Source: Octopus sinensis
Taxonomy: Eukaryota
Length of the DNA stretch: 64,000 nucleotides
NCBI RefSeq assembly: GCF_006345805.1
Contig: NW_021833298.1
Location: forward strand, 1-64,000
Direction: 5' to 3'
Below the pieces are notes generated by a model. The model did no database searches, was not told where the DNA came from, and worked only from the letters and a program-made list of their open reading frames with translations. The position numbers and the translations under genes were made by a program. Positions 13,801 to 64,000 of this stretch are shown piece after piece (the stretch's first letter is position 1; each line of letters starts with the position of its first letter).

Positions 13801-16800
13801 TTAAGACTTAACTCGATTTCTAAGCATTTCCTCACACCCGTGACTTAGAAAATTTGGATCTTTTCCTTTTGAACGGCAAATGTCAACACAATTTATAGTT
13901 AACTAAACACTTTTAAACTTCGTATACTGGTAGAATGTGTTTATAAAACATCATTTTTTTCTTGGCTTTATTGAGAAAATTCCATACTTCCCTGGGCATG
14001 GACACATTGAAACTCCGACGTCTGGCAGCTGACTTGGCAGACACCCATAAAATTATCAACCATCGCACAAACAATAACTCTGAGCACCTCTTCAAACTCC
14101 ACCCATCTAACACCCGTGGACATATTTACAAAGTAAGAAAACAGCACAGCTCCCATGACTTCAGGAAACATTTTTTCACGCTGAGAGTTGCTGAAGCGTG
14201 GAACAAACTGCCGGCATCGGTTGTTAGTTGTCGGAGCACTGCATCCTTTAAGACTTCCATGCTTCCTGAGATTCGCCAACACTACACTTGATTTTCTCCC
14301 CTCCATACACACACAAGCATGTTCACTTTCCAGACATTTCTACATTACTGCATGTACTTTATATGCACTTTCTGACAAGTTGTGGTGCACTGAGCACTGT
14401 ATACAATAATTTCATTCTTATATTTCCACTTTAAAATCGAGCATTTCGGCAATTTTAACCAATCGCTCACTTCCGTTTGGGGTGAAAAGATTCCGTGCTG
14501 TATGAATATGTCCCTCGTTTAAGAAACAGATAGGGTTTATTTACATTTGCGAAGAAAAAAAGGTACCCTTCCCCACCCCTAACCCTAACCCTAATCCTAA
14601 AATAGATTGCAATGCAATAGATCGATATTAGGGTTATAATTATGGGTGACAATTTTATACGACACCGCTACGGAAAATGGGATTTTTTTCTAGCGGTGTC
14701 AAATGAAAATGTCACCCATAATTATGGCCCTAGTATCGATCTATTGCATTTCAATCTATTTTAGGATTAGGAGTGGGGGAAGGGTACCTTTTTTTCTTCG
14801 CAAATGTAAATAAACCCAATCTGTTTCTTAAACAAGGGACATATTCATACAGCACGGAATCTTTTCACCCAAAATGGAGGTGAGCGATTGGTTAAAATTG
14901 CCGAAATGCTCGAAATTTCAGACGAAATATCTTACAACATATACAATTTTCTCAATATAGCCAAGAAAAAATGATGTTTTATAAACACATTCTACCAGTA
15001 TACGAAGTTTAAAAGTGTTAGTTAACTAGAAATTGTGTTGACATCTGCCGTTCAAAAGGAAAAGATCCGAAAATTTTAATTTTTTGACTTTGTACAAAGT
15101 CTTATGAGCTGTCCACAAGGCTTTGGCTTTGGCGACACGAAACCTTTGATGACTCTAAGTCCAAAATTTTAATATTTGTTGTAATAATTACTACTCTGTT
15201 CTTAAGAGTGTGTTTCTTTTCTGATGTATGTTTTATCGACTGTCTATGATGATATTGGCCCAACTCATCTACATGAATGGTGACAGCCATTTCTTGTATA
15301 TTTTCAATTATAATCTAAGTGAAAAACTTCCAATATTCATAATACAATTTTGGCAGCTTTTTTCAACCCAGTCAACAAAAGGTTTTTCTGATAGTATAGA
15401 ACAAGGACAGTAAACAATAATGAGGATCATTTTATATTTCTTTCTTTATTGCAGAATATCATTTTGGTAAATTCCAAGAATATCAACATCACAAACAACT
15501 AACAAAAAAACATCAACCAACCTTCAGAATTTCTGTGTCTTGAGGATAAACCACAAAGTTTACAACTTTGATCCGGCTTGTATTTTGAATTGAGTAGTTT
15601 TTCACGGCTTCATACATAATTCCGGGTAATTCTTCAATGGGGTACCTCAATTTTCCAGCTCCTAATGTAAGGAAATGCAAGGCTTTTTGCTCCCAATTCC
15701 TCAGCTTTTTCCAGACAAATGGTTATTATTTGAGTCAAGTTTGCCAGAATCTAAAAAAAAAATAATTGTTTTGAAATTGATAATGAATATTTTATTACAG
15801 GAAGGAATCGTTAAGTTGTAATTAAATATTCTTTGATTAACACATTCCATAAAGAATTTTTTGTTCTAAACAGAAATGTTTTAGACATTTGAATAACATA
15901 ATCAACTTCTCGTGATTATTGGATTAACAGATCATGTGGTCATTGGATTAACACAGATCATGTGACAGAAGGATCAACACAGATCATGTGATAGCAGAAA
16001 GTCTGGTCTGAGTGAAGATATGGATGCCATGAATGGAAAGAGAAATGTTCCAAGATTTGGTAGTTGCACAGTGTAATTCAGGTGGAATTTTGTAATTAAC
16101 AAAAAAAAAAAACCAGTAATATGGAAGAGGGGAGATTAATTATTATTTACAAGAGGGAAATCTGGGTGAGAACATACTGCAAGAAGCAACAAAACACCCA
16201 CAAGGCAGGGTGCCACAGGCACAAAAGACTCTACACTGCACACAAGAGACTATGGTTGAGTCGAAATGTTCAGGGAATATCTACAATAGAGTCTACATCA
16301 ATTTCAAACAACCAGAATCCATGCTTTGGAAACTGTACAGAATACCACAACACCAGACTGTCACACTGTAGCCCAAACTGTACATCACTGGACATCAAAG
16401 TACATGCTACTGTCTTGAAGCAGACAGAGGTGTTGTATGACTGGAAAAACAGATCTGTGGATTGTGCATAGTTTTATGGACAATTCCATTCATGCCACAG
16501 GGATGCTGGATCAATGATTACCTAGGGTTGTACAACAACTCTTTCAATAAAACAATATCATATGATTGATACTTACTGAATCGGGGGAATCTTCATTCCA
16601 AAAGCGTAATGCCAGATGAAATACATTCTTACACTTGAGGTTGTATCCTTTAGTGATGGCTATTTCAGATGCAGAAATACCTTGAGGATATTTCTGGTTA
16701 CATTCGCTTTGTATCTGGGGACCAGCAGCATTGAGAATAAATTTGGAGATAGACCCTTTGTCAAGCTGGAGATGTTCATTGGTGCTGTTAACGATGACAT

Positions 16801-19800
16801 CAACCTAGAAAAGTAATTTATGTTAAACAGCTAAGGAACATTCCGTGGAGAGAAGAGAGATACATTGTTGCAGTTGATATTGTTGTTAAGAAAGGCTCTA
16901 CAGAATGGCTGTAGTAAGTTTGAGGTTGTTAAAGTTAGCAAAAGATATACTCAAGATATCAGATGTGAAGGAAATAAAATGTTTGAGTTTGATTGAGAAA
17001 ATGTTTTAATTTACTTTAATGATTCCTCATTTGGAAATGAAATAACAATTAAATATAAATAAGTTACATGAATCTATTTACTCACAGATACATTAGTAAT
17101 TGAACCAATCGTTAGGTTTATTTTAACTCCACCAACATTTTCTGTGGATATCACATTAGTCGTGGATGTTATTGGGGCTGCTTTCTGTTGTGGACCAGGA
17201 AAGGATGGGTTTGGTGATGAGGTATCTGAAAATAAACAAATATCAATGTGCCATCATGATGATGATGATCATCATCGTTTAAAATCTACCTTACATGCTG
17301 GCATTGGTTGGATGGCTTAACAGGAGCTGGCCAGGCAGGTGATGGCACCAGACTGCTGTGTCTGGTGCAGTCTTCTGCCTGGCCACACACCTGCTGGTCC
17401 AAGTTGAACAAAATGACACACAAAGACACATCTGTCATAGCAAAAGTGAGGTCCTAAATGCATTGTGCTTATTCGTGCCCATGCTGGGCCCGACACCCAC
17501 ATCTGTCCCTGTGAAGCATCCCCTTCACCACATCTCATCTTCCTAACACCATCCCTCCATTACTCTTCTAACTACGGTCCTACTTTACTGCTGTAACCAT
17601 TTGAGAGCAGAATCTTCACATATTCATCACCACCACCACCACCACCCTTTCGCTAATACCAGTTGCCTCACTTGCGTCATCATCTCCATCAATCATCCCT
17701 TTCTGTCCCTTCCCTAATCTTTCCCACCCCCCCCTTAGCTACACCTTACTCTGCCAGGCTTCATGTTTAACACTTCTCCTATCTGCAATCATTCTCAACA
17801 CCCTCTCACATCCATTATTAATACCCCCACCAATTTTGTGGCCCCACTCACTATAGCCACCCTCATGTATCTCTAACTCCCATCTCTGTCCCAGTTGATC
17901 ATCATCATCAACCCATCCCCTCCACTGTCACATCTTCTACATCATCTCTGTACTTTCTTATCTATTTATGAAATTATGTTTCTGCTGCTCTTCACTGCTA
18001 CTTGTCACTCCCTCCTACCCAACCTCATCTAACTCTCACTTACCCCACTCCAAATGATATTACCATTGCTTGAGAGTGCAAAACTGGAAGCAAGCAATCT
18101 TCGGTGCAAGAAACAAAGTTTAGTCTTATTTCAGAAAGAACTTTCTGTGAAATGACTTCCTGTTTGCTCCATATGTCTTTATTTCTTGCATTTTATCAAT
18201 TTTTTCTGGATTTTTTTTCTTCTTTCATTCAGGGGAGAATATTTCCAAAGGATAAAGAGTATATTGAAATCCAAACTCACTGGCATGTATATACCATTAC
18301 TGTCATAAACACAAGCGAAGTAGCCATCATCATAAACTGTGATGGAATAATTAGATGGGAAATGGAAGACCTTGAGAACAGAGATGGGAAAACAAGGAAC
18401 CTGCTGACATTCTACACAGTCAAAGATTTATATTTCAAGAGAAAGAATGGAGGGAGAAGACTGTATGGAAATGGAGAAAGAGATTTGTAAGGGAGTATGT
18501 TGTTGAGAGTGTTGTGGTGATGTTGATAGCAGTAAGAGCGGAAAAGGTGTGACTGGAAGAAGAGGAAAAAGAAGCGAAGCTTTTGGAACAAGAAATGTTT
18601 ATTAAAAATCTGAAGGATATTGAGATGAGAAGTCATTTCAGGGAATAAAGAAAGGAATTTTGAAGAAAGAGACAGGGGTTTTTTTCATCCTATCTGTGCA
18701 AGATCAACAAACAGAATAAGATACATCAGGAAGACATCTCAACTAAATGTAGAGAGTGTGTGGTGAAAGTGATGGCTGCAGATGTCGTCCCTGAATGTAA
18801 AGTGCCTGCTCAGGGGGTTTCTAATAACTGGAGACATGACAAGACTGTTACAACCACACATTGGCAAATCTGTAAGAAATTCTGGATTTGAACATGTGGG
18901 AAAATAGTATGGCCATAAAACGGAACACATCCTTGGAGATGGCCATCTGAAGGTACTGTTAGATATGAAACACTATGGAAACCCCCAGGTATTGTTGCAC
19001 TCAATAAGGAGGAACAAGTGTGTTGTTTAATTGATGATGCTTGACTGTTTGGAACAGGAATGGTAGACAAAGAATGTGAGAGAATAAAGGAATAACATGG
19101 CCTAAAATATTTGGAACTGCCATAAAGTTTTTTTTCCCAATTATAATTGGAACCTGAGGGAGGCAAGAAATTAGAATGGTTGGTGAAAGCTGTTGGATAT
19201 CAAGAGGAATGTCCTGATTCTACCAGAAAGAATGTTTGCTTGGCAGAGCAAACAGAAAGGAGTTATAACGATGATGATGATAACAACGACAACAACAACA
19301 ATAATAATAAGTGAAGCTCTTGTGAGCCACGAGCAAATTTACTGAGAGGCATGTGGAGCATATTCACCCAAATATCACAATTATACACAGAGACAAACAT
19401 GGATGGGTCATGATAAACATTGCTGTTCCTGCTGACCAGAATGTTGAACTGGCCGAGGGAAGGAAGGCAGACAAATACCAAGATTTGGTGATCCAGGTAT
19501 CGGAAATACATCAAACTGAACAATCTGGTGTGTTTATTTTAATGACTTACCAATGTGTAGAGAGAGTTGCTTTGCCCTAGGTGTTGGGAAGACATTGGCA
19601 AGAAATGGAAAGAAAATCGAAAGAAGAAAAATAATAATAATGATGGTGATGATATAAATAAGGGATACAAATACCCAGGAATGGTGCAAGATGATAAGAT
19701 AATGGAAGGGGAAATTAGAAAGAAAGCTACTAAAGGGAAGAAAAGGAGAGTTAGGAAGATGAATTGGAGAGAACATCATTAAAGGCAATTCTATATGGGC

Positions 19801-21436
19801 AATACCAATACTGAGACATTTTGCTCCTTTCTGATATGCAGGTACCAGAAAGCACAATGCACTCCATCATCAAGGTAATACCAGTCAATTCTGTCTGCCA
19901 AGAAAGGAAGGTGGCAGAGGAATACGAGGTGCAGAAGACACTGTTGGTACTGTGATACTGGAGCTGAAGAATTGTGTTGTAAAGAAAGAATACTTTTGGC
20001 AGCCAGAGACTCTATTGCTCTCTTTTACTGAACCACTAAGTTAGAGGGACATCTATTTGATGGGGCTCTATCACTTTCCGTCTACTAGATCCACTGGTTA
20101 GGTTTTGCCCAGCTCCAGTTTATAGTAGAAGATACTTGCCCAAGGTGCCAGGCAGTGGGTCTGAAGCGGAAATCATGAATCATGGGGTTGAGAGGCAAAC
20201 GTCTTACTATACAGCTGCACCTGTGTATATATGTGTATGTATATATATATATATATCATCATCATCATCATCATCGTTTAGCATCCGCTTTCCATGCTAG
20301 CATGGGTTGGACGATTCAACTGGGGCCTGGGAAGCCAGAAGGCTGCACCAGGCCCAGTCTGATCTAACAGTGTTTCTACGGCTGGATGCCCTTCCTAATG
20401 CCAACCACTCCGTGAGTGTAGTGGGTGCTTTTTACGTGCCACCGGCACAGGTGCCAGTCGGGGCTGGCAAACAGCCATGATCGGATGCTGCTTTTTACGT
20501 GCCACCGGCATGGAGGCCATTCGGAGCAGCGCTGGCAACAGCCACATTTGGATGGCTCACATACGTGCCACCGCCACTGGTATCATAGCTACAATTTCCA
20601 TTGATGTTGATCGATTTTGATTTTGATTTTCACTTGCCTCAACAGGTCTTCACAAATAGAGTTTTGTGTCCCAAGAAGGAAAGGTATGCATAAGTGGACT
20701 GGCTACATCCCAGGTAGAGGCCACAGGTTTTGGTCTCACTTGTCCTGCCGGATCTTCTCACGCACAGCATACTTCCAAAGGACTCGGTCTCTAGTCATTT
20801 CCTCAGTGAGACCTAAAGTTCGAAGGTAGTGCTTCACCACCTCATCCCAGGTTTTCCTGGGTCTACCTCTTCCACAGGTTCCCTCAACCGCTAGGGTGTG
20901 GCACTTTTTCACACCACTATCATCAATCCATTCTCGTCACATGACCATACCAGCGCAGTCGTCTCTCTTGCACACCACATCTGATGCTTCTTAGGTCCAA
21001 CTTTTCTCTCAAGGTACTTACACTCTGTCGACTATGAACACTGACATTACACATCCATCGGAGCATACTGGCTTCATTTCTTGTGAGCTTACGCATATCC
21101 TCAGCAGTCACAGCCCATGTTTCACTGCCATGTAGCATGGCTGCTCGTACACATGCGTCATACAGTCTGCCTTTTACTCTGAGCAAGAGGCCTTTTGTCA
21201 CCGGCAGAGGTAAGAGCTCTCTGAACTTTGCCCAAACTATTCTTATTCTAGCAGCTATACTTACAGCGCACCCTCCCCTGCTACTGACTTGGTCACTTAG
21301 GTAATGGAAACTATCAACTACTTCTAGTTTTTCTCCCTGGAATGTGGCTGAAATTGTTCTCTGCACATTCTCAGTGTTTATTGTTCCTGAGCATCTGCCA
21401 CATACAAAAACTATCTTCCTAGTGAGCCTTCCTTTG

Positions 21437-21470
<34 letters not shown>

Positions 21471-24400
21471 TTTGTGAAATAGAAAGATGAATAATCTTGT
21501 TGCAGATTAATCAAATGTTTAACCGATACCTTGGTAGCAAAAATCACAGCAGAAGACAGCACGGTTGGAGGTACAACCCTATGGTGTTGCAACCGTGCAT
21601 TGGTGCGGATAATTGAATTTTAATATTATTAGTGAATTGAAGAAATGGAGTTGAACGAAGATTGAACAGAAATCGTTTTATTGCATTCTACATGTGTTTC
21701 GAAAGGCACAATTTACCAAATTCTGATTGAATAAGGAGACCATATTGTGTCTTTCTCTTCAGGAAGAAATAGGAAATCCGTTGGAAAAAACAAAAACAGA
21801 ACAGAGGCAATTTGTTTTGCTCCGCCTCTGTTCTGTTTTTGTTTTTTCCAACGGATTTCCTATTTCTTCCTGAAGAGAAAGACACAATATGGTCTCCTTA
21901 TTCAATCGGAATTTGGTAAATTGTGCCTTTCGAAACACGTGTAGAATGCAATAAAACGATTTCTGTTCAATCTTCATTCAACTCCATTTCTTCAATTCAC
22001 TATATATATATATATCATCATCATCATTACTGGGCACTGCACGCATCCTACGCAAAACACTTTCAATACAGTAACCATCAGAGCATCACAGTAAACTACT
22101 GCACGTAACTAAGGCACACAGAGCTGCACTCGGTTGTGAAGTAAAAGCACGCCATAAAAACAAAACAACTGAATAATAACAACAACAACAACAACAATAA
22201 TAATAATCAGGGATGTTCAGTTGAGAAGACACAACAAAGCACCATAATATTCAATATTAACAAACAAATTGTTTACCTTTTGAATGAAATCCTTCATTTT
22301 TCTGTCTATTTAGATATTCAGTAAATATCTGTGAAAACAAATAACAATGAGAATCATTTTTATGTTTTATTTTCCCATTTTTGCAAAAAGAATAGATTTA
22401 ATTTAACAAAAGACAAACAAAATATTTGAAATATTTAATGAGTTATTTCTATTCTGTAATAAGGAAATGAGGAAAATTACTTTATCACTCAGATCAAAGA
22501 TATTCCATCCATGGCCTTCCTGTCTTCTGGGAGATGTGAGACCTATGTCTATATGGTAACAGAGTGAATGCAGCAGAAAAACCTCCCACACTTTACATGG
22601 CCACCAATGTGGTGTCATTGCAGTTAAACATGTGGTAACGGTGTCTTCATGTAGCTGAAGTTCCACTGTTTTTCCTGTCCAGTTACCATCATGGTTAGAT
22701 CTGTTGGATCTTGTGTTTGCAGTCAAAATGTCTATCAAGAATGTTGAATTTGGGGTTTTTCTTGTTACATCCTGTTTGTCCAAAACTATTTCAGGAACAA
22801 ACAGGAGTACAAGGTAATTATTTTGACATTGTAAGGAAGAATGAGAGGAAACCTGACAATTCAGACCGTGGTCCTTCATGACAAAGAAAAGAGAAAAGAT
22901 TCAAAGAGGAAAAGGTTCACAAACAGTTCGACAGTGGACAGAAATTTCCTTCATCTTTTTGTTACAGTGGAAAGACATAAAGATTATATTTTGGTATTAA
23001 TACTGCTTCTATCATTATTATTTCTAATAGACTTTCTGGCTTAAAATCCTTAAATCCTTAAAAATGTTTTAGCCCGAAGACCGTGGCCATGCTGGGGCAT
23101 CTTTAATAAGCCTTCTGGCTATCAGTTATTTCTAATAAACCTTCTAACTATTAATTACCTCTAATAAGTCTTCTGGCTATTTGCAACATGAATATTCTGA
23201 AATGACGTGAAAGTGTATATATATCGTTGACAGTGAGATTCAGCTATGGTGTCGCTGTTGGATGTCTGTCACTGATGGACCCAGGCAGAGTGAAAATACA
23301 TGATCTGGCAGTTCTGGTGCCAGTAGACAGATGATTGTCATCTGCCAACAATATAAATGTGAGTGCTTTTATGCACCATGTGTTCATAGGAAAGCTCCTC
23401 TCAAGGTAAATAACACAGTAAATAACAGCATCCACATTTTGTTGGATATAAAGATTGCCATTTGGTGTTAATAATGCATCTGTTGCTATTGTTTTTAATT
23501 GCCCTGATTTAGGTTCAGTCTCAATGTATGGCACCTTGGACAAGTCTCTTCGACTACAGCCTTAGGCCAAACAAAGCCCAGTGAATGGGTCTGGTAAGCA
23601 GAAACTGAAAGAAGCCTGTCGTACATATGTGTGCAAGTGTTTTTCTCTGCTTTGACATTGTGTGATAGTTGTAGGCGAGTGCCCCTGTTATGCAAGCAGT
23701 GTCCTTTGTTTCTAATATTTTGTAAAATGGGGAAATAGTTACCTCCCTTGGAACGAGGTGAGGGTTGGTGACAGCAAAGGCATCAAGCCATAGAAAATCC
23801 ACCTCAACAAATTCCATCCAACCCATGCAAGCACAGAAAAGTAGATGCTATGATGATGATGATGGTGATGATACTACAGTATGTTTTTGCTACATTTATT
23901 GTATTTTTTCTAAATCTGTCTCTGAAATAATGATAATGATAATATTAATAAATAATAATAATAATAATAATAATAATGTGGATCATCAAGTGCTTAGATT
24001 TGTTTGGAATTGCAAGAATCTAACATGTTTTCTGAAGAGAGTCGGAAAACTGATTCGACATCCTATGGAAAAAAAAAACCCGGGCCCTCTGGGCACCAGA
24101 AGAGGGTTTTCCAAGGCAATAGCTGATCTCTGTTGTATTTTGTTCTTTGTATGATCCCTCTGACCTTGGCACTCAGGAAAATGAACCTGGGCTTTCAACT
24201 AAAGGGAAAATCTCAAACAGTCAACCACTTCTTCTTCATGGATGATTTGAAGCTGTGTGGCAAGGATGAGGCACATTGGAGTTCTTTGCTGAACATGGTC
24301 CACTGCTTTATCATCATCGTTGTTGTTTAACATCCGCTTTCCATGCTGCCATGGGTTGGACGGTTTGACTCAGGGCTGGCAAGCCAAAAGGCTGTACCAA

Positions 24401-27400
24401 GTTCCAATCTGATCTGGCAAAGTTTCTACAGCTGGATGCCCTTCCTAATGCCAACCACTCTGAGAGTGTAATAGGTGCTATTTAAGTGCCACTGGCACGT
24501 GGACAAGTCAGGTGGCACTGGCAACAACCACTCTCGAATGGTGCTTTTTACACGCTACCATCACTGGAGCCAGTCAGGCAGTACTGGAATCGACCACTCT
24601 TGAATGGTGCTTTTTACATTCCACTGGCACATGAGCCAGTGAGGCAGCACTGGCAACAACCACGCTCGGATGGTGCTTTTAATGTGCCACTTGTACGGGA
24701 CCAGTCAGCCGGCAGTGACATCGACTACACTCGAATGATGCTTTTTATGTGCTACCAGCACAGGAGCCAGTGAGGTGGCACTGGCCATAATCACGCTCAA
24801 ATGGTGCTTTTAATGTGCCACCATCATGGGTGCAAATCAGGCAGCACTGTCATTGGCCACGTCAACGATTTCGCTTACTTCAACAGGTCTTCTCAAACAC
24901 AGTTTATTGCCCAATGATTGAAGGGTACTCTTAAATGGGCTGGTTATGCTGCACTGGCATAGGCCACGGTTACAGTCTCACTTGGCACACCTGGTCTTCT
25001 CAAGCACAGTGTATCTCCAAAGGTCTCGGTCACTTGTCATCACCTCCGTCAGGCCCAACGTTTGATGGTTGTGCTTCACCACCTCATCTCAGGTCTTCCT
25101 GGGTCTACTACTTCCACAGGTTCCCTCCACTGTTAGAGTGTGACACTTTTTCACACAACTGACCTCATCAGTGTCTCATGACCATACCAGTCGTCTCTCT
25201 TGCACACCACATCTGATGCTTCTTAAGTCCAACTCTTCTCTTAGGCCACTTACACTGTTGTGTATGCACACTGACATTACACATCCAGTGGAGCATACAA
25301 CCTTCATTTATTGCAAGCTTACACATGTCCTCAGCAGTCACATCCCATGTTCCACTGCCATGTAGCATCGCTGTTCATACACATGCGTCATACAGTCTAC
25401 CTTTCACTCTGAGAGAGACCCTTTGTTACCAGCAGAGGTAGGAGCTTTCTGAACTTTGCCCAGGATATGCTTATTCTAACAGTTATGCTCTCGGAGCATT
25501 CACCCCCTACTACTGGGTTGGTCACCTAGGTAACAGAAGCTATCAACTACTTCTAGTTTTTCACCCTGGAATGTGATGTAAATTGTTTTCTGCACATCTT
25601 CAGTGTTTATTGCTCCTGAGCATCTGCCACACACAAAAACTATCTTCCCAGTTAGCCCCACCCCTTTGATATTGCTGCTTCTCTCATGTGTCTATATCTT
25701 ATACCGGGTACATCTTATGGAGTTTCTATCTACACATTTCCTACAAATTGAGCAGGGCCATCTATCTGAAGGGATTTGTGGGATGTCTGCCTTCTTACTA
25801 AGGCTTTGGTTTTTGCTAGATCGACTCTAAGGCCCTTCAATTTTTAGACCTTGCTTCCGCACCTGAAATGTCTTCTCTAGTTCTGGTAGTGACTCAGCTA
25901 TTAGAGCAAGGTCATCAGCATAGAGAAGCTCCCAAGGGCAGACTGTCTTGAATTCCTCTTTTATTGTCTGGACGACTATGAAAGGGGCCTGAAGACCAAT
26001 CCTTAGTGAACCTCTACTTCTACCTGGAATTCTTCACTAGACTCATTGCCGACCCTTATCTTACTGACAGCATCCCTGTACATGGCTTGCACAGCTCTCA
26101 CTAACCATTCATCTATCCCTAGTTTCCTCATTGACCACCAGATAAAGGATTGGGGCACCCTGTCAAAGGCTTTCTCCATATCAACAAAAGCCAGATACAG
26201 AAGTTTATGTTTGGCTAGGTATTTCTCTTGCAGCTGTCTTACCAGAAATATAGCATCAGTGGTGCTTTTCCACGGCACAAACCCAAACTGTATCTTGTCT
26301 AAACTGACTCTCTCCCTAATTAGTTGGGCTACAACCCTCTCTGTGACTTTCATTACTTGATCCAACAACTTGATACCTCTGTAATTATAGTATCTAATGC
26401 ATCACCTTTACCTTTGTAGCAGTTGACTATGGTGCTGCTACACCAGTCACTGGGTATGACTCCTTCATGTATCACCTCATTGACTATACAAGTGACTAGA
26501 CTATAGCCTACACCGCCAGATATTTTAAGCACCTCTGCAGTGATTCCTGATGGACTGGGGCTTTCCCTGTCTTCATACTCTTAATTGCTTTATCTACCAA
26601 GGTACTGTAAATTTAGATAGCTGGTCCCTATGTTGGGTCGACATTTGGCAGACTCTCTTTCTCCCATTCATTCTCTTCATTTGGCAACCTTTCATAGTGA
26701 TGTCACCAAGTCTCTCTCTTTGCAGCATCATTAAATGCAAGTGAGCCATCCTCCATGCAGACACATTTCTCTCCTATGACATCACGATTCTCTCTCACAC
26801 ACTGTCTTGCAACATGAAGCACCTCAAGTCTTTGGTCCTCACTACGCAAAACATTGGCAAATTTTTTCCTTTAGTGCTGTTAAAATGTCCAACCCATGCC
26901 AGCATGGAAACCAGATGTTAAATGATGATGATGATAATTCCATGTTTTATTTTGTTTTCTATTTCCTTTGTGTATTTCAAAATACATTTTTTGTAAATTC
27001 TAAAAATTTCAACATAAAACAACAAATACAGCAACCAACCTTTATTATTTTTGTCTCTGTAGGAAAAACAACAAAGTAAACGTCTTTGATCTGGCTTGAA
27101 TTTTGATTTGAGTAGTTTTTCACTGCTTCATACATAATTCCAGGTAGTTCTTCAATGGGGTACCTCATTTTTCCAGTCCCTAATATAGGAAATGCCAGGC
27201 TTTTTGCTCCCATTCTCTCAGCAGTTTTTAGACAATTGGTTATTATTTGAGTCAAGTTTGCTAAAATCTATAAAAATAATTGTTTAGTAATTGATAATGA
27301 ACATTTTATTAAATTATTTTCTTACTACAGGAAGGAATCATTAAGTTGTATTAAATATAATCCCCCTTCAGTTAGATGGCCCTGCTCGATCTGTAGAAAA

Positions 27401-30400
27401 GGCGTAGGGAGAAACTCCATAAGATGTACCCAGTCTAAGCTATGGACACATAAGAGGGGCAGAGGTATCAGAGGAAAGTTATCTGGGAAAATATTTTTTG
27501 TGTGTGGAAGGTGTAATAAACAGTAGAAATGTACAGAAAAGAGACTCCATCAAGTGACAGTGGGGAAAGTTAGAAGTAGTTGATAGCTCCTATTATCTAG
27601 GTGACCAAGTTAGTAGCGGAGGTGGATGCTCTGAAAGAATAGCTACTAGAATAAGACGAGGCCAGGCAAAGTGCAGAGAGCTTCTACTTCTGCTGGTAAC
27701 AAAAGACCATGAAGTTAGTGTGCTACACTGGATGTGCAATGCCATTGTGCGTGTACAACAGAGAGTAAGTGTCATGAGAGTCGAGAGAAAAAAATGGCCA
27801 TAAGAGGCATCAGATGTGGTGGTGGTGCAAGAGACACAACTGCATTGGTATGTGATGTGCACGGACAGGGACGGCTGTGTGAAGAAGTGATGATATCTAA
27901 CTTTGGAGGGAACCTGTGGAAGACCCAGGAAAACATGGGATGAGGTGGTGAAGCATGACCTTTGAATGTTTGGGCCTCACAGAGGCAATCACAACTGACC
28001 AAGACTTTTGGCAATATACTGTGTGTGAGGGGACTAATCAGGTCTAGTGGAATCGTAGCTGAAGCCATGCCAGTGTCATGTAAAGGCTAGCTGTGAATGG
28101 TCATCGTGGTCACTGCCATATACATAACACCCATGCATCATACTTGTGCTCATTGATGGTGCCATGTAAATTGGGACGTGGGAATCATGACCAATGGTGA
28201 TGCCGTGCAAATGGCACCTATGCATTGTGGTCATAGTCACTGTCGGTGCCATGTAAATTGCACCCATCCACGAATCATAGTTGTGGCTGTGGTCGGTCTC
28301 ATGTGAATGGCGCCCATACTGGTGGTATGTAAAGGTACCCATTACACTCCTGGAATGGTTAGCGTTAGCAAGAACATCCAGCTGTAGAAACCATGCCAAA
28401 TCAGACTGGAACCTGGTGCAGCTCCTCAGCTTATCATCCCCCAGTTAAAATGTCCAACCCATGCCAGCATGGAAAGCAGACGTTAAAATATGATGATGAT
28501 TTTGTTGTTCTAAACAGAAATGTTTTACAGATTTGAATAATAATAAACAACTTCTAGTGACTATTGGATTAACAGATCATGTGGTCATTGGATTAACACA
28601 GATCATGTGGTCATTGGATTAACACAGATCATGTGACAGAAGGATCAACACAGATCATGTGATAGCAGGAAGTCTGGTCTGAGTGAAGATATGGATGCCA
28701 TGAATGGAAAGAGAAATGTTCCAAGATTTGGTAGTTGCACAGTGTAATTCAGGTGGAATTTTGTAATTAACAAAAAAAAAAAAAACAGTAATATGGAAGA
28801 GGGGAGATTAATTATTATTTACAAGAGGGAAATCTGGGTGAGAACATACTGCAAGAAGCAACAAAACCACCCACAAGGCAGGGTGCCACAGGCACAAAAG
28901 ACTCTACACTGCACACAAGAGACTATGGTTGAGTCGAAATGTTCAGGGAATATCTACAATAGAGTCTACATCAATTTCAAACAACCAGAATCCATGCTTT
29001 GGAAACTGTACAGAATACCACAACACCAGACTGTCACACTGTAGCCCAAACTGCACATCACTGGACATCAAAGTACATGCTACTGTCTTGAAGCAGACGG
29101 AGGTGTTGTATGACTGGAAAAACATATCTGTGGATTGTGCATAGTTTTATGGACAATTCCATTCATGCCACAGGGATGCTGGATCAATGATTACCTAGGG
29201 TTGTACAACAACTCTTTCAATAAAACAATATCATATGATTGATACTTACTGAATCGGGGGAATCGTCATTCCAAAAGCGTAATGCCAGATGAAATACATT
29301 CTTACACTTGAGGTTGTATCCTTTAGTGATGGCTATTTCAGATGCAGAAATACCTCGAGGATATTTCTGGTTACATTCGCTTTGTATCTCTGAACCAGCA
29401 GCATTGAGAATAAATTTGGAGACAGCACCTCTCTGAAGCTGGAGCTGTTTATTGCTGCTGTTAACGATGACATCAACCTAGAAAAGTAATTAATGGTAAA
29501 CAACTAAGGAACATTCCGTAGAGAGAAGAGAGATACATTGTTGCAGTTGATATTGTTGTTAAGAAAGGCTCTACAGAATGGCTGTAGTAAGTTTGAGGTT
29601 GTTAAAGTTAGCAAAAGATATACTCAAGATATCAGATGTGAAGGAAATAAAATGTTTGAGTTTGATTGAGAAAATGTTTTAATTAACTTTAATGATTCCT
29701 CATTTGGAAATGAAATAACAATTAAATATAAATAAGTTACATGAATCTATTTACTCACAGATGCATTAGAAATTGAATCAATCAATAGTTGTATTTTGAT
29801 GCCAGCATTTTCTCTGGATGTCACAGTAGTTCTGTATAACATGGAGGATAATTTCTGTAGTGAACCAGGAAAGGATGGGTTTGGTGATGGGGTATCTGAA
29901 AATAAACAAATAGCAATATATATGTAAAACAACTCTCCTTTACAACTGTACACCTGTTTCTGTTCTATTTCTTGTTATCTCTCTCTCTCCCTCTTCCCCT
30001 ATCTCTCAGGCCAGGTAACCTTGTACCTCCTCCTCAGCAAGGCACATGTTTCTATCTCTCCATCTCACTCTAACATTTTATCATCTGACACAAGAACCTC
30101 TCCTGCAATGCCCCCTCTCCTCTCAAAGGATTCTTGTCTTGCAAGGTACTTGGTGACCCTGCCAGTGCTGGTGCCACTTAAAAAGCATCCACTCCACACT
30201 GTAAAGTGGTTGGTGTTTGGAAGGGCATCCAACAGTAGAAACCTTGCCAAAACTGACCTTGCCTGTGCTGGTGTCACATAAAAAGCAGTCAATCCACTCT
30301 GTGGGGTGGTTGGTGTTGGGAAGAGCATCCAGCCATAAAAACCATGTCAAAACAGACACAGATGTTTGGTGCGGTCTTCTTTCTGGCTAGCCCTGGTCAG

Positions 30401-33400
30401 ACCATCCAACCCATGCCAGCAGGGAAAAAAGCTGTTAAATGACAAAGAAGATGATGGCGATGATATATATATTATCATCATCATCATCATTTAGCATCTG
30501 TTGTCCAAGCTGGCATGGGTTGGACAGTTTGACCAGGTCTGGAAGGCTGCACCAGACCCCAATCTGATCTGGCATGGTGTCTACAGCTGGATGCCCTTCC
30601 TAATGCCAACCAATCCAAGAGTGTAGTGGGTGCTTTTACGTGCCACCAGCATGGGTGCCATTTGCACGACACTGGTATCTGCCCCGACTGCCATTTTACT
30701 TGGCTTCATGGCTCTTCTTCTTAAGCACGACATAATGCCAAAGCACTCTGTCATTACTTCTGTGAGGCCCAACATTTGAAAGGTTGGCACGTGTGCCAGT
30801 TATGTGACACCAGCATCAACCACGACCATGATTTCACTTGGCTTCACAGGTCCTCTCAAGCACAGGACATTGCCAAAGGTCTTGATCACTAGTCAATACC
30901 TCTGTGAGGCCCAAAGTTTGAAGATCATGCTTCACAACGTCGTCCCGTGTCTACCTCTACCACAGGTTCCCTCCACAGTTAGAAACCAGCACTTATTTAC
31001 ACAGCTGTCCTTGTCCAAACGCATCACATGACCATACCAGTGCAGGCTTCTCTCTTGCACCACCACATCTGATGCCTCTTACACCCAGCTTTTCTCTAAA
31101 GATGTTTACACTCTGTTGAACATGCACATGGACATTGCACAGCCAATGAAGCATACAAGCTTCATTTCTTTCAACCCTATGCATATCCTCAGCTGTAACA
31201 GTCCATGTTTCACTGCCATGTAGCATAGCCATTCACACACAATCTGCCTTTCACACACACACATGTATACACAAAACTTAAAGAATGGTATAGATAAGAT
31301 CCGGGCTACAAGCGGAATATCAGAAGTGGTAAATCTCCAAGCGAGGTGTATACTGCAGCCTACTCATCAGGCTGAGGGTATCTTGATTAAATAAATGTTT
31401 ACATTGTAATAAGGAGGTACACGTTAACACATGGAAGACTCAGTCAGAATGAATAGAGAGCACAGAAGGAGAGGAGAACATAAATGGGGAGAGAAAGAAG
31501 AAGAAAAGAAAAAAAACATGTGAAGTGAGAGGAGTGAGGAATATAAATAAGGTCATTTGTCCAGTAGTATTCAATAAAGCTGCTAAGGTGGTATTTCATC
31601 TGTCTGTACGTTCTGAGTTCAAATTCCGCCGAGGTCGACTTTGCCTTTCATCCTTTCGGGGTCGATTAAATAAGTACCAGTTACGCACAGGGGTCGATAT
31701 AATCGACTTAATCCATTTGTCTGTCCTTGTTTGTCCTCTCTGTGTTTAGCCCCTTGTGGGTAGTAAAGAAATAGGTATTTCGTCTGTTTTTACATTCTGA
31801 GTTCAAACTCCAGTGAGGTCGACTTTGCATTTCATCCTTCCGGGGTCAATAAATTAAGTACCAGTTGTGTACTGGGGTCGATCTAATTGATTGGCCCCCT
31901 TCCACAAAAAATTTGGGCCTTGTGCCTAGAGTAGAAAGGATTATTCAATAGGGCTGCTTTGGTCGAATTGCAGAAGGGGAGAGGTATTAGAAAGGTAATG
32001 TGTGGGGAAGAGGGTGGGGAAATGTTTTTAGTGAAGAGGGAGACAAAAGTATGAAGAAAGCAAGAGAGAATGGAGAAGAATCATGGCGGCTACCACATGT
32101 GTCCAATTCGTGAATGTATATTGTGTGCTGGGAGCATGTTTACAGTATGAAGTAGGGGAGGTGTCTGTTGGCGGCTGTACCTGTAAGGTTATGAGCAGGA
32201 GTGGGGCGGCAGGTGAGATAATAGGAAAAAATGTTTAAATGGTATGGGAAAAATACAGAGAGAAGCAAGTAAATGGTAACATGGAATTAAAGGGAAGACA
32301 TATTGCCGGTTTAATAATATGGCAGTAGTAAGGGGGGCATAAGAGGGAAAATTTATGAAGGCTGGGGGGGATGCGGAGTGTGGTTGTTGTGTTTAGAAAA
32401 TGGATTTGGTGATCAAGTTTTCTCAAATAAGAGACGGAGATTGGTTTGTTGGGGTAGGATGTGTGAAAAGTTTTCTTGTTAGGTGTGGGTGGAGCACACA
32501 GATCTGGGGCTAGGGGATAGCAGTGAGACAGGGCCAGGAGGACAGGACTGGGGAGTGGGAGGTAAGACTAGTGCATGAAGGAGGAGATGTGAGGAAGAGA
32601 TGTAGTTTGGTTTGTTGTGGTAGGGCGTGCGAGAAGTTTTCATTTTAAGTGTGGGTGGAGCACACAGATCTGGGGCTAGGGGATAGCAGTGAGACAGGGC
32701 CAGGAGGACAGGACTGGGGAGTGGGAGGTAAGCCTAGTGTATGAAGGAGGAGATGTGAGGAAGAGATGTAGTTTGGTTTGTTGGGGTAGGGCGTGCGAGA
32801 AGTTTTCTTGTTAGGTGTGGGTGGAGCACACAGATCAGGGGCTAGGGGATAGCAGTGAGACAGGGCCAGGAGGACAGGACTGGGGAGTGGGAGGTAAGCC
32901 TAGTGCATGAAGGAGGAGATGTGAGGAAGAGATGTAGTTTGGTTTGTTGTGGTAGGGCGTGCGAGAAGTTTTCATTTTAAGTGTGGGTGGAGCACACAGA
33001 TCTGGGGCTAGGGGATAGCAGTGAGACAGGGCCAGGAGGACAGGACTAGGGAGTGGGAGGTAAGCCTAGTGCATGAAGGAGGAGATGTGAGGAAGAGATG
33101 TAGTTTGGTTTGTTGGGGTAGGGCGTTCGAGAAGTTTTCTTGTTAGGTGTGGGTGGAGCACACAGATCTGGGGCTAGGGGATAGCAGTGAGACAGGGCCA
33201 GGAGGACAGGACTGGGGAGTGGGAGGTAAGCCTAGTGCATGAAGAGGAGATGTGAGGAAGAGATGTAGTTTGGTTTGTTGTGGTAGGGCATGCGACAAGT
33301 TTTCTTGTTAGGTGTGTGGGTGGAGCACACAGATCTGGGGCTAGGGGATAGCAGTGAGACAGGGCCAGGAGGACAGGACTTGGGAGTGGGAGGTAAGCCT

Positions 33401-51918: not shown

Positions 51919-53195
51919 CGAGGGGCGTTCAATAAGTAATGCCCCTGACCCACTTCCCATAGCAGTAGAGCAACGAAACTTGGCACAGTCTTTTTCTACA
52001 TAGGAACCACCCAGAGTTACGCATTTCTCCCATCGTTTGATGTGGCTCTGGAGACCGTTTTTGTAGAAGAACCCAGCTTGGTCCTCCAACCTCAACGTGA
52101 CTTCAGAAATCAAGGCTGCATCATCTGGGAAACGCTTTCCTTTCAAAAACAACTTCATGATTGGGAAGAGGTGAAAATCAGAGGGTGCAAGGTCAGGAAA
52201 GTATGGGGAGGAGTTCATAGCCATACGCCTGTGCTTCTGATCTGGCGACAAGCGAGATGTGGACCGGAGCGTTGTCCTGCAGGAGGAGGATGCCTTTGCT
52301 GATCTTGCCCCGCCTCTTGATTTTGATAACTTCTCTTAATTTCCTCAAAAGTGAAGCATAATAGGCTCCTGCAATTGTGGTACCCTTTGCCAGGAAATCT
52401 GTCATCACTACTTTGTCCTGGTCCCAGAAGACTGTGAGCATGACCTTTCCAGCGGAGGGCTGCACCCTTGCCTTCTTTGGAGGGGGTGAGTCGCGGTGCT
52501 TCCACTGCATTGACTGGGCTTTGGTCTCTGGATCATCGTGATGGACCCAGGTTTCATCCTGTGTAATCAGTCTTATGAAATATTTTGACTCATCTTCTTG
52601 GCACATCTTCAAATTCACCCTCGAGCACTCGACGCGTTCTTGCTTCTGGAAAGGCGTGAGCAACCTGGGAATCCAACTGGCAGACACCTTTTGCATATGC
52701 AAATGGTCATGAATGATAGTTTCCACAGACCCGGTACTAATCTTGACCTCATGGGCTATTTGGCGAATAGTTATGCGTCGATCTTCCAAAATGGCAGCCT
52801 CAACTTGACGGACAGATGCCTCATCAATGGCAGAAGGGGTCGACCAGATCTGGGAGCTGTTTCCACAGAGTTCCGACCATGTTTGAATTCACGATGCCAG
52901 CGTTTTACAAGGTCATATGATGGGGCATCATTACCATAAGTTACTTTCATTTCATCAAAAGTCTCCCGTGGTGTGCGTCCTTTCAAATACAAAAACCGGA
53001 TCACTGCTCGACACTCAACAGGCTCCATTTCACACTTGACTTGGTTCAAACACCTGTAAATCAGAAACCACAATTAATTCAGTGCTGTAATTTGCCACTT
53101 CCTCTATAGAGATATAAATGATTGCACATGCAAAATTTCAGCTAGATCAAACAGCTGCAAGTGGGTCAGAGGCATTACTTATTGAACGTCCCTCG
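51919..53195 (-). mobile_element. Full-length mariner (DD34D) element, transposase disrupted by two frameshifts
   Basis: TIRs cgaggggcgttcaataagtaatgcc, TA TSD; ATG at 53028; DETW, LLQDNAPVH and PDLAPSDFHLF motifs across three ORFs. Confidence 0.97.
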
Positions 53196-62904: not shown

Positions 62905-64000
62905 TAGTCAACACCATCATCATCATCATCGTCGTCGTCGTCGTTTAACGTCCGCTTTCCATGCTGGCATGGGTTGGACAGCTTGTCTGGGGACTGGCAA
63001 GCCAGGAGGCTGCACCAGGCTCCAGTCTGATCTGGCAGAGTTTCTACAGCTGGATGCCCTTCCTAACGTCAATCACTCCAAGAGTGTAGTGGGTGCTTTT
63101 AATGTGCCACCGGTGCGGAGGCCAGTTAGGTGGCACTGGCATCAACCACACTCAAAGGGTGCTTTTTATGTGCACCAGGCACGGGAGCCAGTCAGGCAGC
63201 ACAAGCAATAACTACACTTGAATAATGCTTTTTACATGCCACCAGCATGGGTACCAGTCGCGGGACTGGCATCTGCCACGTCAACGATTTCACTTAACTC
63301 ATCAAGTTTTCTCAAGCATAATGCTCAATGATTGAAGGGTACTCTTAAATGGGCCAGTTCTGTGACACTGACATAGGCCATAGCTATGGGCTCACTTGGC
63401 ATGCCTGTTCTTCTCAAGCACAGCGTATCTCCAAAGGTCTCGGTCACTTGTCATCACCTCCGTGAGGCCCAACGTTTGATGGTTGTGCTTCACCACCTCA
63501 TCTCAGGTCTTCCTGGGTCTACTACTTCCACAGGTTCCCTCCACTGTTAGAGTGTGACACTTTTTCACACAACTGACCTCATCCATTAGTGTCTCATGAC
63601 CATACCAGTCGTCTCTCTTGCACACCACATCTGATGCTTCTTAAGTCCAACTCTTCTCTTAGGCCACTTACACTCTGTTGTGTATGCACACTGACATTAC
63701 ACATCCAGTGGAGCATACAAGCTTCATTTATTGCAAGCTTACGCATGTCCTCAGCAGTCACATCCCATGTAGCATGACTGTTCACATGCATGCGTCATAC
63801 AGTCTGCCTTTCACTCTGAGTGAGAGGCCCTTTGTTACCAGCAGAGGTAGGAGCTTTCTGAACTTTGCCCAGGATATGCTTATTCTAACAGTTATGCTCT
63901 CAGAGCATTCACCCCCTACTACTGGGTTGGTCACCTAGGTAACAGAAGCTGTCAACTACTTCTAGTTTTTCACCCTGGAATGTGATGTAATTTGTTTTCT
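62905..64000 (-). mobile_element. RTE LINE 3' portion running off the window
   Basis: 3'UTR and RT C-terminus; close to 24310-25590. Confidence 0.92.

What the first reader, a model, noticed from the sequence alone, without database searches (positions are those of the whole stretch)
16577..29477. Duplicated macrodomains look homogenised except at the ADP-ribose-binding loop
Hand count: the intron between linker and first macro exon is 281 nt in both copies with 5 differences. Codons 31-76 of the exon differ at 2 nt. Codons 8-30 differ at 12 nt, giving 9 amino-acid changes (NSTNEHLQLDKGSIS vs NSSNKQLQLQRGAVS). Across the exon, 11 of 12 changed codons are replacements. The flanking linker and second-half exons are more diverged (18/76 aa in the latter). 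Established: this segment is the loop before the first helix that binds the diphosphate and distal ribose, and primate macro-PARPs evolve under positive selection. Inference: gene conversion over ~1.1 kb (15960-17085 vs 28620-29760) is opposed by selection keeping the two binding pockets different, suggesting an immune arms race in a mollusc.
Basis: partly seen in the sequence, partly recalled or inferred. Interest (0 to 1): 0.8.

Follow-up and report, generated by a model that had tools for sequence, protein, structure and literature searches.

The report
Octopus macro-PARP repeats, mosaic by conversion
Two neighbouring ADP-ribose-reader (macro) repeats of an octopus PARP14-like gene really are near-identical except around the binding loop, but the loop shows ordinary between-copy divergence and it is the rest that was copied, so selection on the loop is not shown.

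Summary
The counts are exact: 281-nt intron with 5 differences, codons 31-76 with 2, codons 8-30 with 12. The clustering is not chance (P<5e-5). The gene lies on the minus strand and is a macro-PARP: unit B, a spacer exon, unit A, tail exons, then a PARP catalytic domain.

The inference does not hold as stated.
- The 281-nt intron is nearly identical in every family member sampled. A-B is 98.2%, the same as A versus an O. sinensis paralogue on another scaffold. It is therefore not evidence for an A-B event.
- Codons 8-30 differ by 17.4%, against a family norm of 15.7%.
- The only A-B-specific tract is codons 45-76, at 1% against 12%, probably running on into intron 2.
- The replacement:silent ratio of 10:2 fits neutrality (P=0.46).
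- Most loop variants are shared with other paralogues in a mosaic pattern.
- Unit A has a +1 frameshift in its second-half exon.
- The O. sinensis orthologue carries the same A mosaic, so A is not an assembly chimera, and the event predates that split.

Family-wide, the introns inside the unit are less diverse than fourfold-degenerate exon sites. That suggests concerted evolution confined to the introns. This broader pattern is the more interesting result.

The parts
29759..29895 (-). Unit B linker exon (137 nt). It ends with the first strand of the macro domain (...IDSISNAS).
   Evidence: tblastn of octopus PARP14-like proteins. Acceptor TTTTCAG| and donor |GTGAGT read.
29478..29758 (-). Unit B intron 1 (281 nt). 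This intron is near-identical across the whole family.
   Evidence: 98.2% to A and 93-98.6% to all other units.
29250..29477 (-). Unit B macro N-half exon (76 codons, phase 0 at both ends), open.
27040..27267 (-). Unit B macro C-half exon (76 codons), open.
22277..22328 (-). Spacer exon (IFTEYLNRQKNEGFHSK plus 1 nt) joining unit B to unit A.
   Evidence: Transcript-derived P0001 shows the same order: macro, spacer, next linker.
17086..17225 (-). Unit A linker exon (140 nt), 79-81% identical to B's.
16805..17085 (-). Unit A intron 1 (281 nt). The distal 238 nt is conserved family-wide. The proximal 43 nt is variable family-wide.
   Evidence: No Rfam hit and no unusual folding energy, z = -0.17.
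16577..16804 (-). Unit A macro N-half exon (76 codons).
   Evidence: Identical in the O. sinensis orthologue apart from a 1-nt deletion there.
16715..16783 (-). There are 12 A-B differences. For 8 of them both states also occur in other paralogues, at a ninth only A's state does, and 3 are unique to B.
   Evidence: Alignment to PARP14 macro2.
16577..16672 (-). Codons 45-76, the only stretch that is similar specifically between A and B (1 difference in 96 nt; the nearest other unit differs at 14-15). It carries the shared derived sequence ALRFWN(E/D)DSPDS. This is the minimal exonic conversion tract. Its 5' end lies between 16673 and 16716.
   Evidence: Run of 25 concordant polymorphic sites, P=0.008.
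15952..16576 (-). The part of unit A intron 2 that is 99% identical to B (28623-29249) and also to paralogue S of O. sinensis. It ends distally at a 26-nt tandem repeat.
15522..15750 (-). Unit A macro C-half exon (229 nt) with a +1 frameshift, an extra T at about 15670 (CCTTAC). The frameshift is absent from B, from the O. sinensis orthologue and from paralogue S.
12651..12705 (-). Tail exon 1 (KFKEYFQEISTDGSTASS).
   Evidence: matches O. sinensis model P0014.
11274..11339 (-). Tail exon 2 (ASTKSQPGKSQKKKFRHRNVKK).
7000..7137 (-). PARP catalytic domain, first exon (approximate ends).
   Evidence: PF00644 at 76.7 bits.
6447..6641 (-). PARP catalytic domain, second exon (contains LWHGT; approximate ends).
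13..279 (-). PARP catalytic domain, last exon (GVYFA ... YPNYLITF; approximate 5' end).

Best explanation
The window carries the 3' part of a PARP14/15-like macro-PARP gene on the minus strand. It comes from an octopus of the O. vulgaris/sinensis complex. The gene has two tandem macro2-type units, B upstream and A downstream, each split into a linker exon, an N-half exon and a C-half exon.

The units belong to an octopus family with three features. The two introns inside the unit are kept nearly identical among paralogues, which is concerted evolution limited to the introns. The exons stay 10-20% diverged. The exons are also mosaics of shared variants shuffled by short-tract exchange.

On that background, one non-allelic gene conversion copied the 3' part of the N-half exon from one unit to the other. 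The direction was probably B to A. The tract covers codons 45-76 at least and codons 31-76 at most, and probably runs into intron 2. It happened before the split from O. sinensis.

The 'island' at the ADP-ribose-binding loop is the unconverted ancestral remainder of the exon. It is bounded 3' by the conversion end-point and 5' by an intron that is alike in all units anyway. Nothing in the two copies requires selection on the loop.

What is shown: the anatomy, the counts, the family profile, the mosaicism, and the same A mosaic in the orthologue.
What is inferred: the direction of conversion, conversion as the cause of the intron homogeneity, and the species assignment.
For: Anatomy:
- Macro exons and PARP exons are mapped.
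- O. sinensis model P0014 splices the unit-A C-half exon to the tail exons and the PARP domain.

Orthologue:
- L007 is collinear with window 1-21466 at 96-98.7%.
- Its unit A' has the identical N-half exon, including both the A-type loop and ALRFWN.

A-B divergence compared with the diversity of six other units, segment by segment:
- linker exon 20.7% vs 16.1%
- intron 1 distal 0.5% vs 3.4% (nearest other unit differs at 1-2 sites)
- intron 1 proximal 9.5% vs 8.7%
- codons 8-30 17.4% vs 15.7%
- codons 31-44 2.4% vs 8.7% (A-L004 differ at 1 site)
- codons 45-76 1.0% vs 12.3% (nearest other unit differs at 14-15 sites)

Introns:
- Intron 1 identity is 98.2% for A-B, A-L004 and A-S alike.
- Both introns are 96-98% identical among other paralogues whose exons are 82-92% identical.
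- Fourfold-degenerate sites have pi of 0.09-0.18, against 0.038 for intron 1 (Fisher P=5e-4).
- The one O. bimaculoides unit is 6.8% from the others in intron 1, against 2.8% among the others. In the exons it is no more distant than they are from each other.

Mosaicism:
- 88 of 210 site pairs fail the four-gamete test, and Rm is at least 12 in 228 nt.
- A's patch is closest to L004 (6 differences) and S (8). B's states are shared with L004, L002, L003b and S.

Direction:
- P0001, a B-like transcript, has B's loop together with ALRFWNEDSPDS.
- S, which is closest to A in the loop and the C-half exon, has the family-typical VLPPWDEN.
Against: - No orthologue or independent assembly of unit B was obtained. 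O. sinensis synteny breaks at window 21466, inside a repeat and next to an assembly gap.
- P0001 carries R41 like B while A has Q41, so the tract's 5' end or its direction is uncertain.
- The species effect in the introns rests on a single O. bimaculoides unit.
- The average omega of about 1 in the N-half exon, against 0.6 in the C-half exon, together with several hypervariable loop positions (11, 15, 16), leaves room for diversifying selection that eight sequences cannot detect.
- A conversion end-point and selection against converting the loop predict the same two-copy pattern.
Confidence: 0.6

Rival explanations
1. Conversion repeatedly sweeps the whole 1.1 kb, and natural selection removes converted alleles at the ADP-ribose-binding loop because the two pockets must stay different, as in an immune arms race.
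For: - Differences cluster at loop 1 and the first helix.
- Family-wide, the most variable codons are 11, 15, 16, 22, 25, 29 and 33 in that segment, plus 68.
- N-half exon pN/pS is about 1, against 0.6 in the C-half exon.
- Exons stay diverse while introns are homogenised.
- All five B-unique changes in the exon are replacements.
- Primate PARP9/14/15 are under positive selection (PMC4038475).
Against: - The N:S ratio of 10:2 is the neutral expectation (P=0.46).
- The patch divergence equals the family norm.
- The patch includes 43 nt of intron.
- Intron 1 identity is not specific to A and B.
- The number of codons with 4 or more residues among 8 units is about what uniform neutral change would give (my rough Poisson estimate).
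- Loop variants are exchanged among paralogues rather than kept private.
- Unit A is frameshifted here, and its orthologue is frameshifted elsewhere.
Confidence: 0.22
2. The introns are not homogenised but functionally constrained, for example by splicing control of a repeated exon array or by an embedded RNA element. Under this view the exon/intron contrast says nothing about conversion.
For: - Intron 1 is 93-98% identical in all nine units from three species, with a sharp drop at the exon borders.
- Intron 2 behaves the same way within each of its two length classes.
Against: - No Rfam match.
- Folding energy is no better than shuffles, z = -0.17.
- Constraint would have to cover almost every base of 281 + 580 nt.
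- The O. bimaculoides unit is 2.4 times more distant in intron 1 than the sinensis/vulgaris units are from each other, yet it is not more distant in the exons. That is expected from species-wise homogenisation and not from constraint.
Confidence: 0.1
3. Assembly artefact. The near-identical tracts were produced by collapse, chimeric joining or mis-polishing between repeated units, and the frameshift is an indel error of the same origin.
For: - The family sits in repeat-rich sequence. Several O. sinensis members lie on unplaced scaffolds.
- Both assemblies carry single-base indels in short T runs in unit A.
- B has no independent confirmation.
Against: - The independent O. sinensis assembly has the same unit-A mosaic base for base across the exon.
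- The A-B tract is 0.8% diverged, not identical.
- Paralogue S shows the same pattern of identical introns around a diverged exon.
- P0001, which is transcript-derived, confirms a B-type loop joined to ALRFWN and the unit order.
Confidence: 0.06

Closest known systems
Human PARP14 macrodomain 2 (PDB 3Q71, 5O2D; 3VFQ for macro1-2)
   Same: - It is the best solved relative (E=5e-24 alone, 3e-36 in the tandem construct).
- It has the same VDVxVNS strand.
- Loop 1 is degenerate, L-x-R/K-G-x-x-S in place of GGG.
- Loop 2 reads AFPxxGTG.
- It lies upstream of a PARP catalytic domain.
   Different: - The octopus units are repeated macro2-type modules only. No macro1-type exon is present in the window.
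- No WWE domain is recorded in the orthologous model P0014.
- Binding has not been tested.
Rapidly evolving vertebrate macro-PARPs (PARP9/14/15; Daugherty et al. 2014, PMC4038475)
   Same: It is a macro-PARP family with lineage-specific turnover and fast protein evolution. N-half exon pN/pS is about 1.
   Different: There the evidence is site-model positive selection among orthologues. Here no test reaches significance, and the signal is confounded by exchange between paralogues.
MHC class I/II genes: introns homogenised by recombination while peptide-binding exons stay diverse (recalled from the literature, not checked here)
   Same: Intron diversity is lower than synonymous diversity of the adjacent exons. 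The exons are mosaics of shared motifs. The transition at exon borders is sharp.
   Different: In MHC the pattern is among alleles under demonstrated balancing selection. Here it is among paralogous repeat units, and selection has not been demonstrated.
Venom phospholipase A2 and conotoxin genes: introns more conserved than mature-peptide exons, 'accelerated exon evolution' (recalled, not checked here)
   Same: Introns are 3-4 times less diverged than exons. Exon dN is about equal to dS.
   Different: Those are secreted toxins with dN/dS often well above 1. Here omega is about 1, and there is evidence for species-wise intron homogenisation.

Membership tests
Macro domain (Pfam PF01661), PARP14-macro2-like | Scores above the Pfam gathering threshold | tested here: met
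   B 72 bits and A 66 bits (A with X at the frameshift) against a cut-off of 22.
Macro domain (Pfam PF01661), PARP14-macro2-like | Closest solved structure is PARP14 macrodomain 2, aligned over the whole domain | tested here: met
   3q71/5o2d, residues 1-171 of the query, E about 1e-23.
Macro domain (Pfam PF01661), PARP14-macro2-like | Open reading frame through both half-exons | tested here: inconclusive
   B is open. A has a +1 frameshift at about 15670. Whether that is an assembly error or real cannot be told without reads.
Macro domain (Pfam PF01661), PARP14-macro2-like | Binds ADP-ribose | not testable with these tools
   Needs protein and a binding assay. The AF2 model is of low confidence (pLDDT 50).
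Macro-PARP (PARP9/14/15 type) | Macro domain(s) and a PARP catalytic domain in one transcript | tested here: met
   O. sinensis model P0014 joins the C-half exon of the orthologous unit A to the tail exons and PF00644. All of these exons are collinear in the window.
Macro-PARP (PARP9/14/15 type) | WWE domain before the catalytic domain (PARP14 but not PARP15) | tested here: inconclusive
   Only PF00644 is recorded for P0014 and its relatives. The window was not scanned exhaustively because the Pfam tool refuses frames that contain stops.
Non-allelic (interparalogue) gene conversion tract | A stretch far more alike than the flanks and than any other pair in the family | tested here: met
   Codons 45-76 show 1 difference, against 14-15 to the nearest other unit. 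Concordant-site run P=0.008, not corrected for 28 pairs.
Non-allelic (interparalogue) gene conversion tract | The whole 1.1-kb identical tract is specific to the A-B pair | tested here: not met
   Intron 1 is 98.2% for A-B, A-L004 and A-S alike. Intron 2 is 99.0% for A-S and 98.6% for B-S.
Non-allelic (interparalogue) gene conversion tract | The mosaic is reproduced in an independent assembly | tested here: inconclusive
   Met for A (O. sinensis L007). B's orthologue was not obtained.
Positive or diversifying selection on the binding loop | dN/dS significantly above 1 in codons 8-30 | tested here: not met
   For A-B, Sd=2 and Nd=10, omega 1.5, binomial P=0.46. Family pN/pS is 1.06-1.16.
Positive or diversifying selection on the binding loop | Site-model support from orthologues of several species | not testable with these tools
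   Only one orthologue (A') could be fetched, and it is identical in the exon.
Concerted evolution restricted to introns (MHC-like pattern) | Intron diversity below synonymous diversity of the adjacent exons | tested here: met
   Intron 1 pi is 0.038, against 0.089 and 0.184 at fourfold sites. Variable sites are 29/255 against 13/37, P=5e-4. Intron 2 is 96% identical against 86-91% for the exons.
Concerted evolution restricted to introns (MHC-like pattern) | Introns group by species while exons do not | tested here: inconclusive
   The direction is as predicted: L002 is 6.8% against 2.8% in intron 1, and 13.6% against 12.2% in the exon. This rests on a single O. bimaculoides unit. Attempts to fetch more failed.

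The most novel reading that the evidence does not exclude
The octopus macro-PARP family may be organised as a diversity-maintaining cassette system. In it, near-identical introns would act as homology anchors for frequent short-tract exchange, and the macro2 exons, including the ADP-ribose-binding loop, would be held diverse and continually reshuffled by selection. That would be an MHC- or var-like architecture in an invertebrate antiviral ADP-ribose reader.
Probability: 0.18. Interest if true: 0.75.

Novelty: new member of a known kind. Interest (0 to 1): 0.4.

Why it matters
Macro-PARPs are interferon-linked antiviral factors in vertebrates, and almost nothing is known about them in cephalopods.

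The specific claim, that selection keeps two binding pockets apart against gene conversion, would have been direct evidence of an immune arms race in a mollusc. The data do not support it beyond a plain conversion end-point.

The broader pattern found here is worth recording: a lineage-specific family of macro2 units whose introns are homogenised while the exons remain diverse and mosaic. It gives a concrete test set for asking whether invertebrate ADP-ribose readers diversify like immune receptors. It also warns that near-identical introns in this family cannot be read as evidence of recent exchange between any particular pair of units.

Tried and rejected
- L001 (O. sinensis unit S) was first taken as the orthologue of A because 1.8 kb aligns at 94%. 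This was rejected. The true orthologue is L007, 465 kb away and 99% identical, so S is a paralogue.
- Rfam scan of 15300-17400 found only sub-threshold miRNA noise outside the unit.
- RNA folding of intron 1 gave z = -0.17, so no structure signal.
- The intron tracts are not dispersed repeats. Copies occur only inside macro units in the roughly 300 kb sampled.
ORF filtering plus targeted Pfam calls were used instead.
A family member gave only pLDDT 50, so no fold search was run.
- More O. bimaculoides units were sought through P0012, P0013 and P0019. Two are not on record, and the third locus has no macro unit within 10 kb and many gaps.
- The O. vulgaris loci for P0004 and P0010 were too long to fetch. 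L006 is a paralogue.
- RNA-editing-like or hypermutation spectra were considered for the exon excess and rejected. The 12 patch differences are 4 transitions and 8 transversions of mixed types (read).
- Literature search found no paper on octopus macro-PARP evolution.

Full report
WHAT IS THERE

The feature lies on the minus strand. tblastn with octopus 'PARP14-like' proteins, plus reading of the splice sites, defines two macro units. Each unit is split into a linker exon, an N-half exon and a C-half exon.
- Unit B: 29759-29895, 29250-29477 and 27040-27267.
- Unit A: 17086-17225, 16577-16804 and 15522-15750.
- A 52-nt spacer exon at 22277-22328 joins them.

Downstream come two tail exons (12651-12705 and 11274-11339) and three exons of a PARP catalytic domain (about 7000-7137, 6447-6641 and 13-279). 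The catalytic domain scores PF00644 at 76.7 bits.

The O. sinensis gene model P0014 splices the C-half exon of the orthologous unit A to these tail and PARP exons. This is therefore a genuine macro-PARP.

Both units pass the Pfam Macro threshold. Their best solved relative is human PARP14 macrodomain 2. A low-confidence AF2 model of a family member gives the same order of strand, loop and helix.

OBSERVATION

- Intron 16805-17085 is 281 nt in both copies, with 5 mismatches.
- Codons 31-76 have 2 mismatches.
- Codons 8-30 have 12 mismatches and 9 replacements.
- The high-identity tract is 15952-17089 against 28623-29762.
- The second-half exons differ at 18 of 76 residues.

The clustering is far beyond chance: 12 of 24 differences fall within 69 nt, and none of 20000 random placements reached this.

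Two facts were missed. First, the divergent patch extends 43 nt into the intron, with four of the five intron differences at 16819-16847. Second, unit A's C-half exon has an extra T at about 15670 that shifts the frame (AFPYIRSWKIEVPH*).

ORTHOLOGUE AND PARALOGUES

The PARP exons led to O. sinensis locus L007. It is collinear with window 1-21466 at 96-98.7% identity, with 0.8-4% mismatches. From this I infer that the window comes from a very close relative of O. sinensis, probably O. vulgaris.

The orthologous unit A' is 99% identical to A.
- Its N-half exon is identical base for base, including both the A-type loop and the ALRFWN tract.
- The one exception is its own 1-nt deletion in a TTTT run.
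- It lacks the window's frameshift.

So the A mosaic is not an artefact of this assembly, and it predates the species split.

Synteny with O. sinensis ends at window 21466, inside a repeat and next to an assembly gap. No orthologue of B was obtained.

Seven further units were fetched:
- S on L001, a paralogue 465 kb from L007 on the same chromosome;
- two units on L003, plus L004 and L005 (O. sinensis);
- L002 (O. bimaculoides);
- L006 (O. vulgaris).

THE FAMILY PROFILE CHANGES THE READING

Intron 1 is nearly the same in every unit. Mean pairwise identity is 95.5%. A-B is 98.2%, and so are A-L004 and A-S; B-S is 98.6%. By contrast the flanking linker exon averages 82% and the N-half exon 88%.

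The same holds for intron 2 within each of its two length classes.
- A, B and S are 98.6-99.2% identical over 625 nt.
- L004, L005 and L006 are 96% identical over 580 nt.
- The exons of those same units are 82-92% identical.

A-B divergence compared with the diversity of the six other units, segment by segment:

| Segment | A-B | Six other units | Note |
|---|---|---|---|
| Linker exon | 20.7% | 16.1% | |
| Intron 1, distal | 0.5% | 3.4% | nearest other unit differs at 1-2 sites |
| Intron 1, proximal | 9.5% | 8.7% | |
| Codons 8-30 | 17.4% | 15.7% | |
| Codons 31-44 | 2.4% | 8.7% | A-L004 differ at 1 site |
| Codons 45-76 | 1.0% | 12.3% | nearest other unit differs at 14-15 sites |

The divergent loop segment is therefore ordinary for this family. 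The A-B distance of 12 sits inside a family range of 6-15. What is exceptional is the identity of codons 45-76, which carry the shared derived motif ALRFWN(E/D)DSPDS found in no other genomic unit.

A permutation test on polymorphic sites gives a run of 25 concordant sites for A-B in that stretch (P=0.008 for the pair). Similar significant fragments appear in other pairs.

SELECTION TESTS

In the patch, Sd=2 and Nd=10 on 15.7 synonymous and 53.3 non-synonymous sites. Omega is 1.5, and the binomial probability of at least 10 replacements among 12 changes is 0.46. 'Eleven of twelve changed codons are replacements' is what neutrality predicts.

Family-wide pN/pS values:
- codons 8-30: 1.06-1.16
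- codons 31-60: 0.85-0.89
- codons 61-76: 0.85-1.01
- C-half exon: 0.61

Several loop codons (11, 15, 16) have 4-5 residues among eight units. By my rough Poisson estimate from the synonymous tree length, that number of hypervariable codons is about what uniform neutral change would give. Thirty-five invariant codons indicate some constraint elsewhere. Diversifying selection at a few sites is therefore neither shown nor excluded.

MOSAICISM

For 8 of the 12 patch differences, both states occur in other units. At a ninth (16772) only A's state does, and three are unique to B.
- A's patch is closest to L004 (6 differences) and S (8).
- L004's loop is B-like in its 5' half and A-like in its 3' half.
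- Across the N-half exon, 88 of 210 pairs of informative sites fail the four-gamete test, and Rm is at least 12 in 228 nt. Neighbouring sites are more compatible than distant ones (P=0.04).
- Between A and A', a cluster of four changes in six bases (15523-15528) makes A' match paralogue S. This looks like a recent micro-conversion.

The exons do exchange short patches. They are not shielded from conversion.

INTRONS AGAINST SILENT SITES

Fourfold-degenerate sites in codons whose first two bases are invariant have pi of 0.089 (N-half) and 0.184 (C-half). Intron 1 has pi of 0.038. Variable sites number 13/37 against 29/255 (P=5e-4). The exon excess is therefore not only amino-acid replacement.

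The single O. bimaculoides unit is 6.8% from the other units in intron 1, whereas those units differ by 2.8% among themselves. In the N-half exon the figures are 13.6% and 12.2%. The introns carry a species signal and the exons do not. That is the signature of concerted evolution confined to the introns. It rests on one sequence from the outgroup species.

Intron 1 has no Rfam match and no unusual folding energy. Its copies occur only inside units.

MOST LIKELY MECHANISM

One non-allelic conversion copied the 3' part of the N-half exon, and probably intron 2, between B and A before the O. sinensis split.

The direction B to A is inferred from two observations. P0001, a B-like transcript-derived protein at 90% identity, combines B's loop with ALRFWNEDSPDS. 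S, the closest relative of A in the loop and the C-half exon, keeps the family-typical VLPPWDEN.

The 5' end-point lies between codons 30 and 45. The apparent resumption of identity upstream is the family-wide intron.

Why the introns stay alike while the exons do not is open. There are three possibilities.
- Selection against homogenising functionally distinct exons.
- A neutral, self-reinforcing barrier. Conversion needs long perfect matches and is aborted in mismatch-dense exons.
- Constraint on the introns. This is the least likely given the species signal.

CAVEATS

- B is unconfirmed by any second source at the DNA level.
- Polishing between repeated units could have removed differences.
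- Both assemblies carry a single-base indel in unit A, at different places. Either both are long-read errors in short T runs, or unit A is decaying. If A is decaying, present-day selection on A's pocket is moot.
- Eight sequences from a recombining family give little power for site tests.

COMPARISON AND NOVELTY

The domain is a member of the macro family and is PARP14-macro2-like. The gene is of the PARP14/15 type. Fast evolution of macro-PARPs is known in primates (PMC4038475). No paper on octopus macro-PARPs was found.

Conversion mosaics among tandem paralogues are a known kind of event. The intron/exon contrast resembles MHC genes and some venom gene families (recalled from the literature, not checked here).

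The finding is a real feature that is more ordinary than proposed, sitting inside a family-level pattern that deserves a proper multi-species analysis.

Noticed in passing
window 15669-15670 (minus-strand exon 15522-15750): There is a +1 frameshift (extra T, CCTTAC) in the C-half exon of macro unit A. It is absent from unit B, from the O. sinensis orthologue and from paralogue S. If real, it truncates the macro domain and puts the downstream PARP domain out of frame.
   Followed up: partly
L007 about 8999 (O. sinensis orthologue; corresponds to window 16621): The orthologous unit A' has its own 1-nt deletion in a TTTT run of the N-half exon. This probably explains why NCBI's model P0014 starts at an internal Met in the C-half exon. 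There are two independent indels in the same unit in two assemblies.
   Followed up: partly
window 15523-15528 and 15433-15436 vs L007: Clusters of 4 substitutions within 6 and 4 bases separate A from its orthologue. In both clusters the orthologue matches paralogue S. This looks like a recent micro-conversion in one lineage.
   Followed up: no
window 15927-15978 and 28572-28661: A 26-nt tandem repeat (ACAGATCATGTGGTCATTGGATTAAC) lies exactly at the distal end of the A-B high-identity tract. A has two copies and B has three.
   Followed up: partly
window 32429-38792: A 166-bp satellite with 38 copies at 93% identity. GC skew is very strong (+0.6) and GC content is 50-53%. It lies upstream of unit B, inside or beside the gene.
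   Followed up: no
window 9712-11162: A 1.45-kb (AAT)n microsatellite (GC 18%) lies in the intron between tail exon 2 and the PARP exons.
   Followed up: no
window 52196-53073 (minus strand): A mariner/Tc1-type transposase ORF (PF01359, E=3e-22), with an N-terminal HTH-like part in an adjacent frame. It is interrupted.
   Followed up: partly
window 21623-22009: A perfect-looking hairpin element: inverted repeat with 186-nt arms, 97% complementary, separated by 15 nt. It is MITE-like or a foldback element.
   Followed up: no
window 3805-5244, 20613-21450, 24867-26770, 63319-64000: Four copies of a non-LTR retrotransposon fragment with reverse-transcriptase ORFs (PF00078). Synteny with O. sinensis stops inside the copy ending at 21466.
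   Followed up: partly
window 27312-28499: Intron 2 of unit B carries about 1.2 kb of repeat-derived insertion that unit A lacks, including SINE-like pieces also found at 12.4, 20.3, 24.4, 30.5 and 48 kb.
   Followed up: no
L003 4862-5611: A second macro unit in this O. sinensis scaffold has indels in its N-half exon (a pseudo-unit), while its intron 1 is still 93.5% identical to A's.
   Followed up: no
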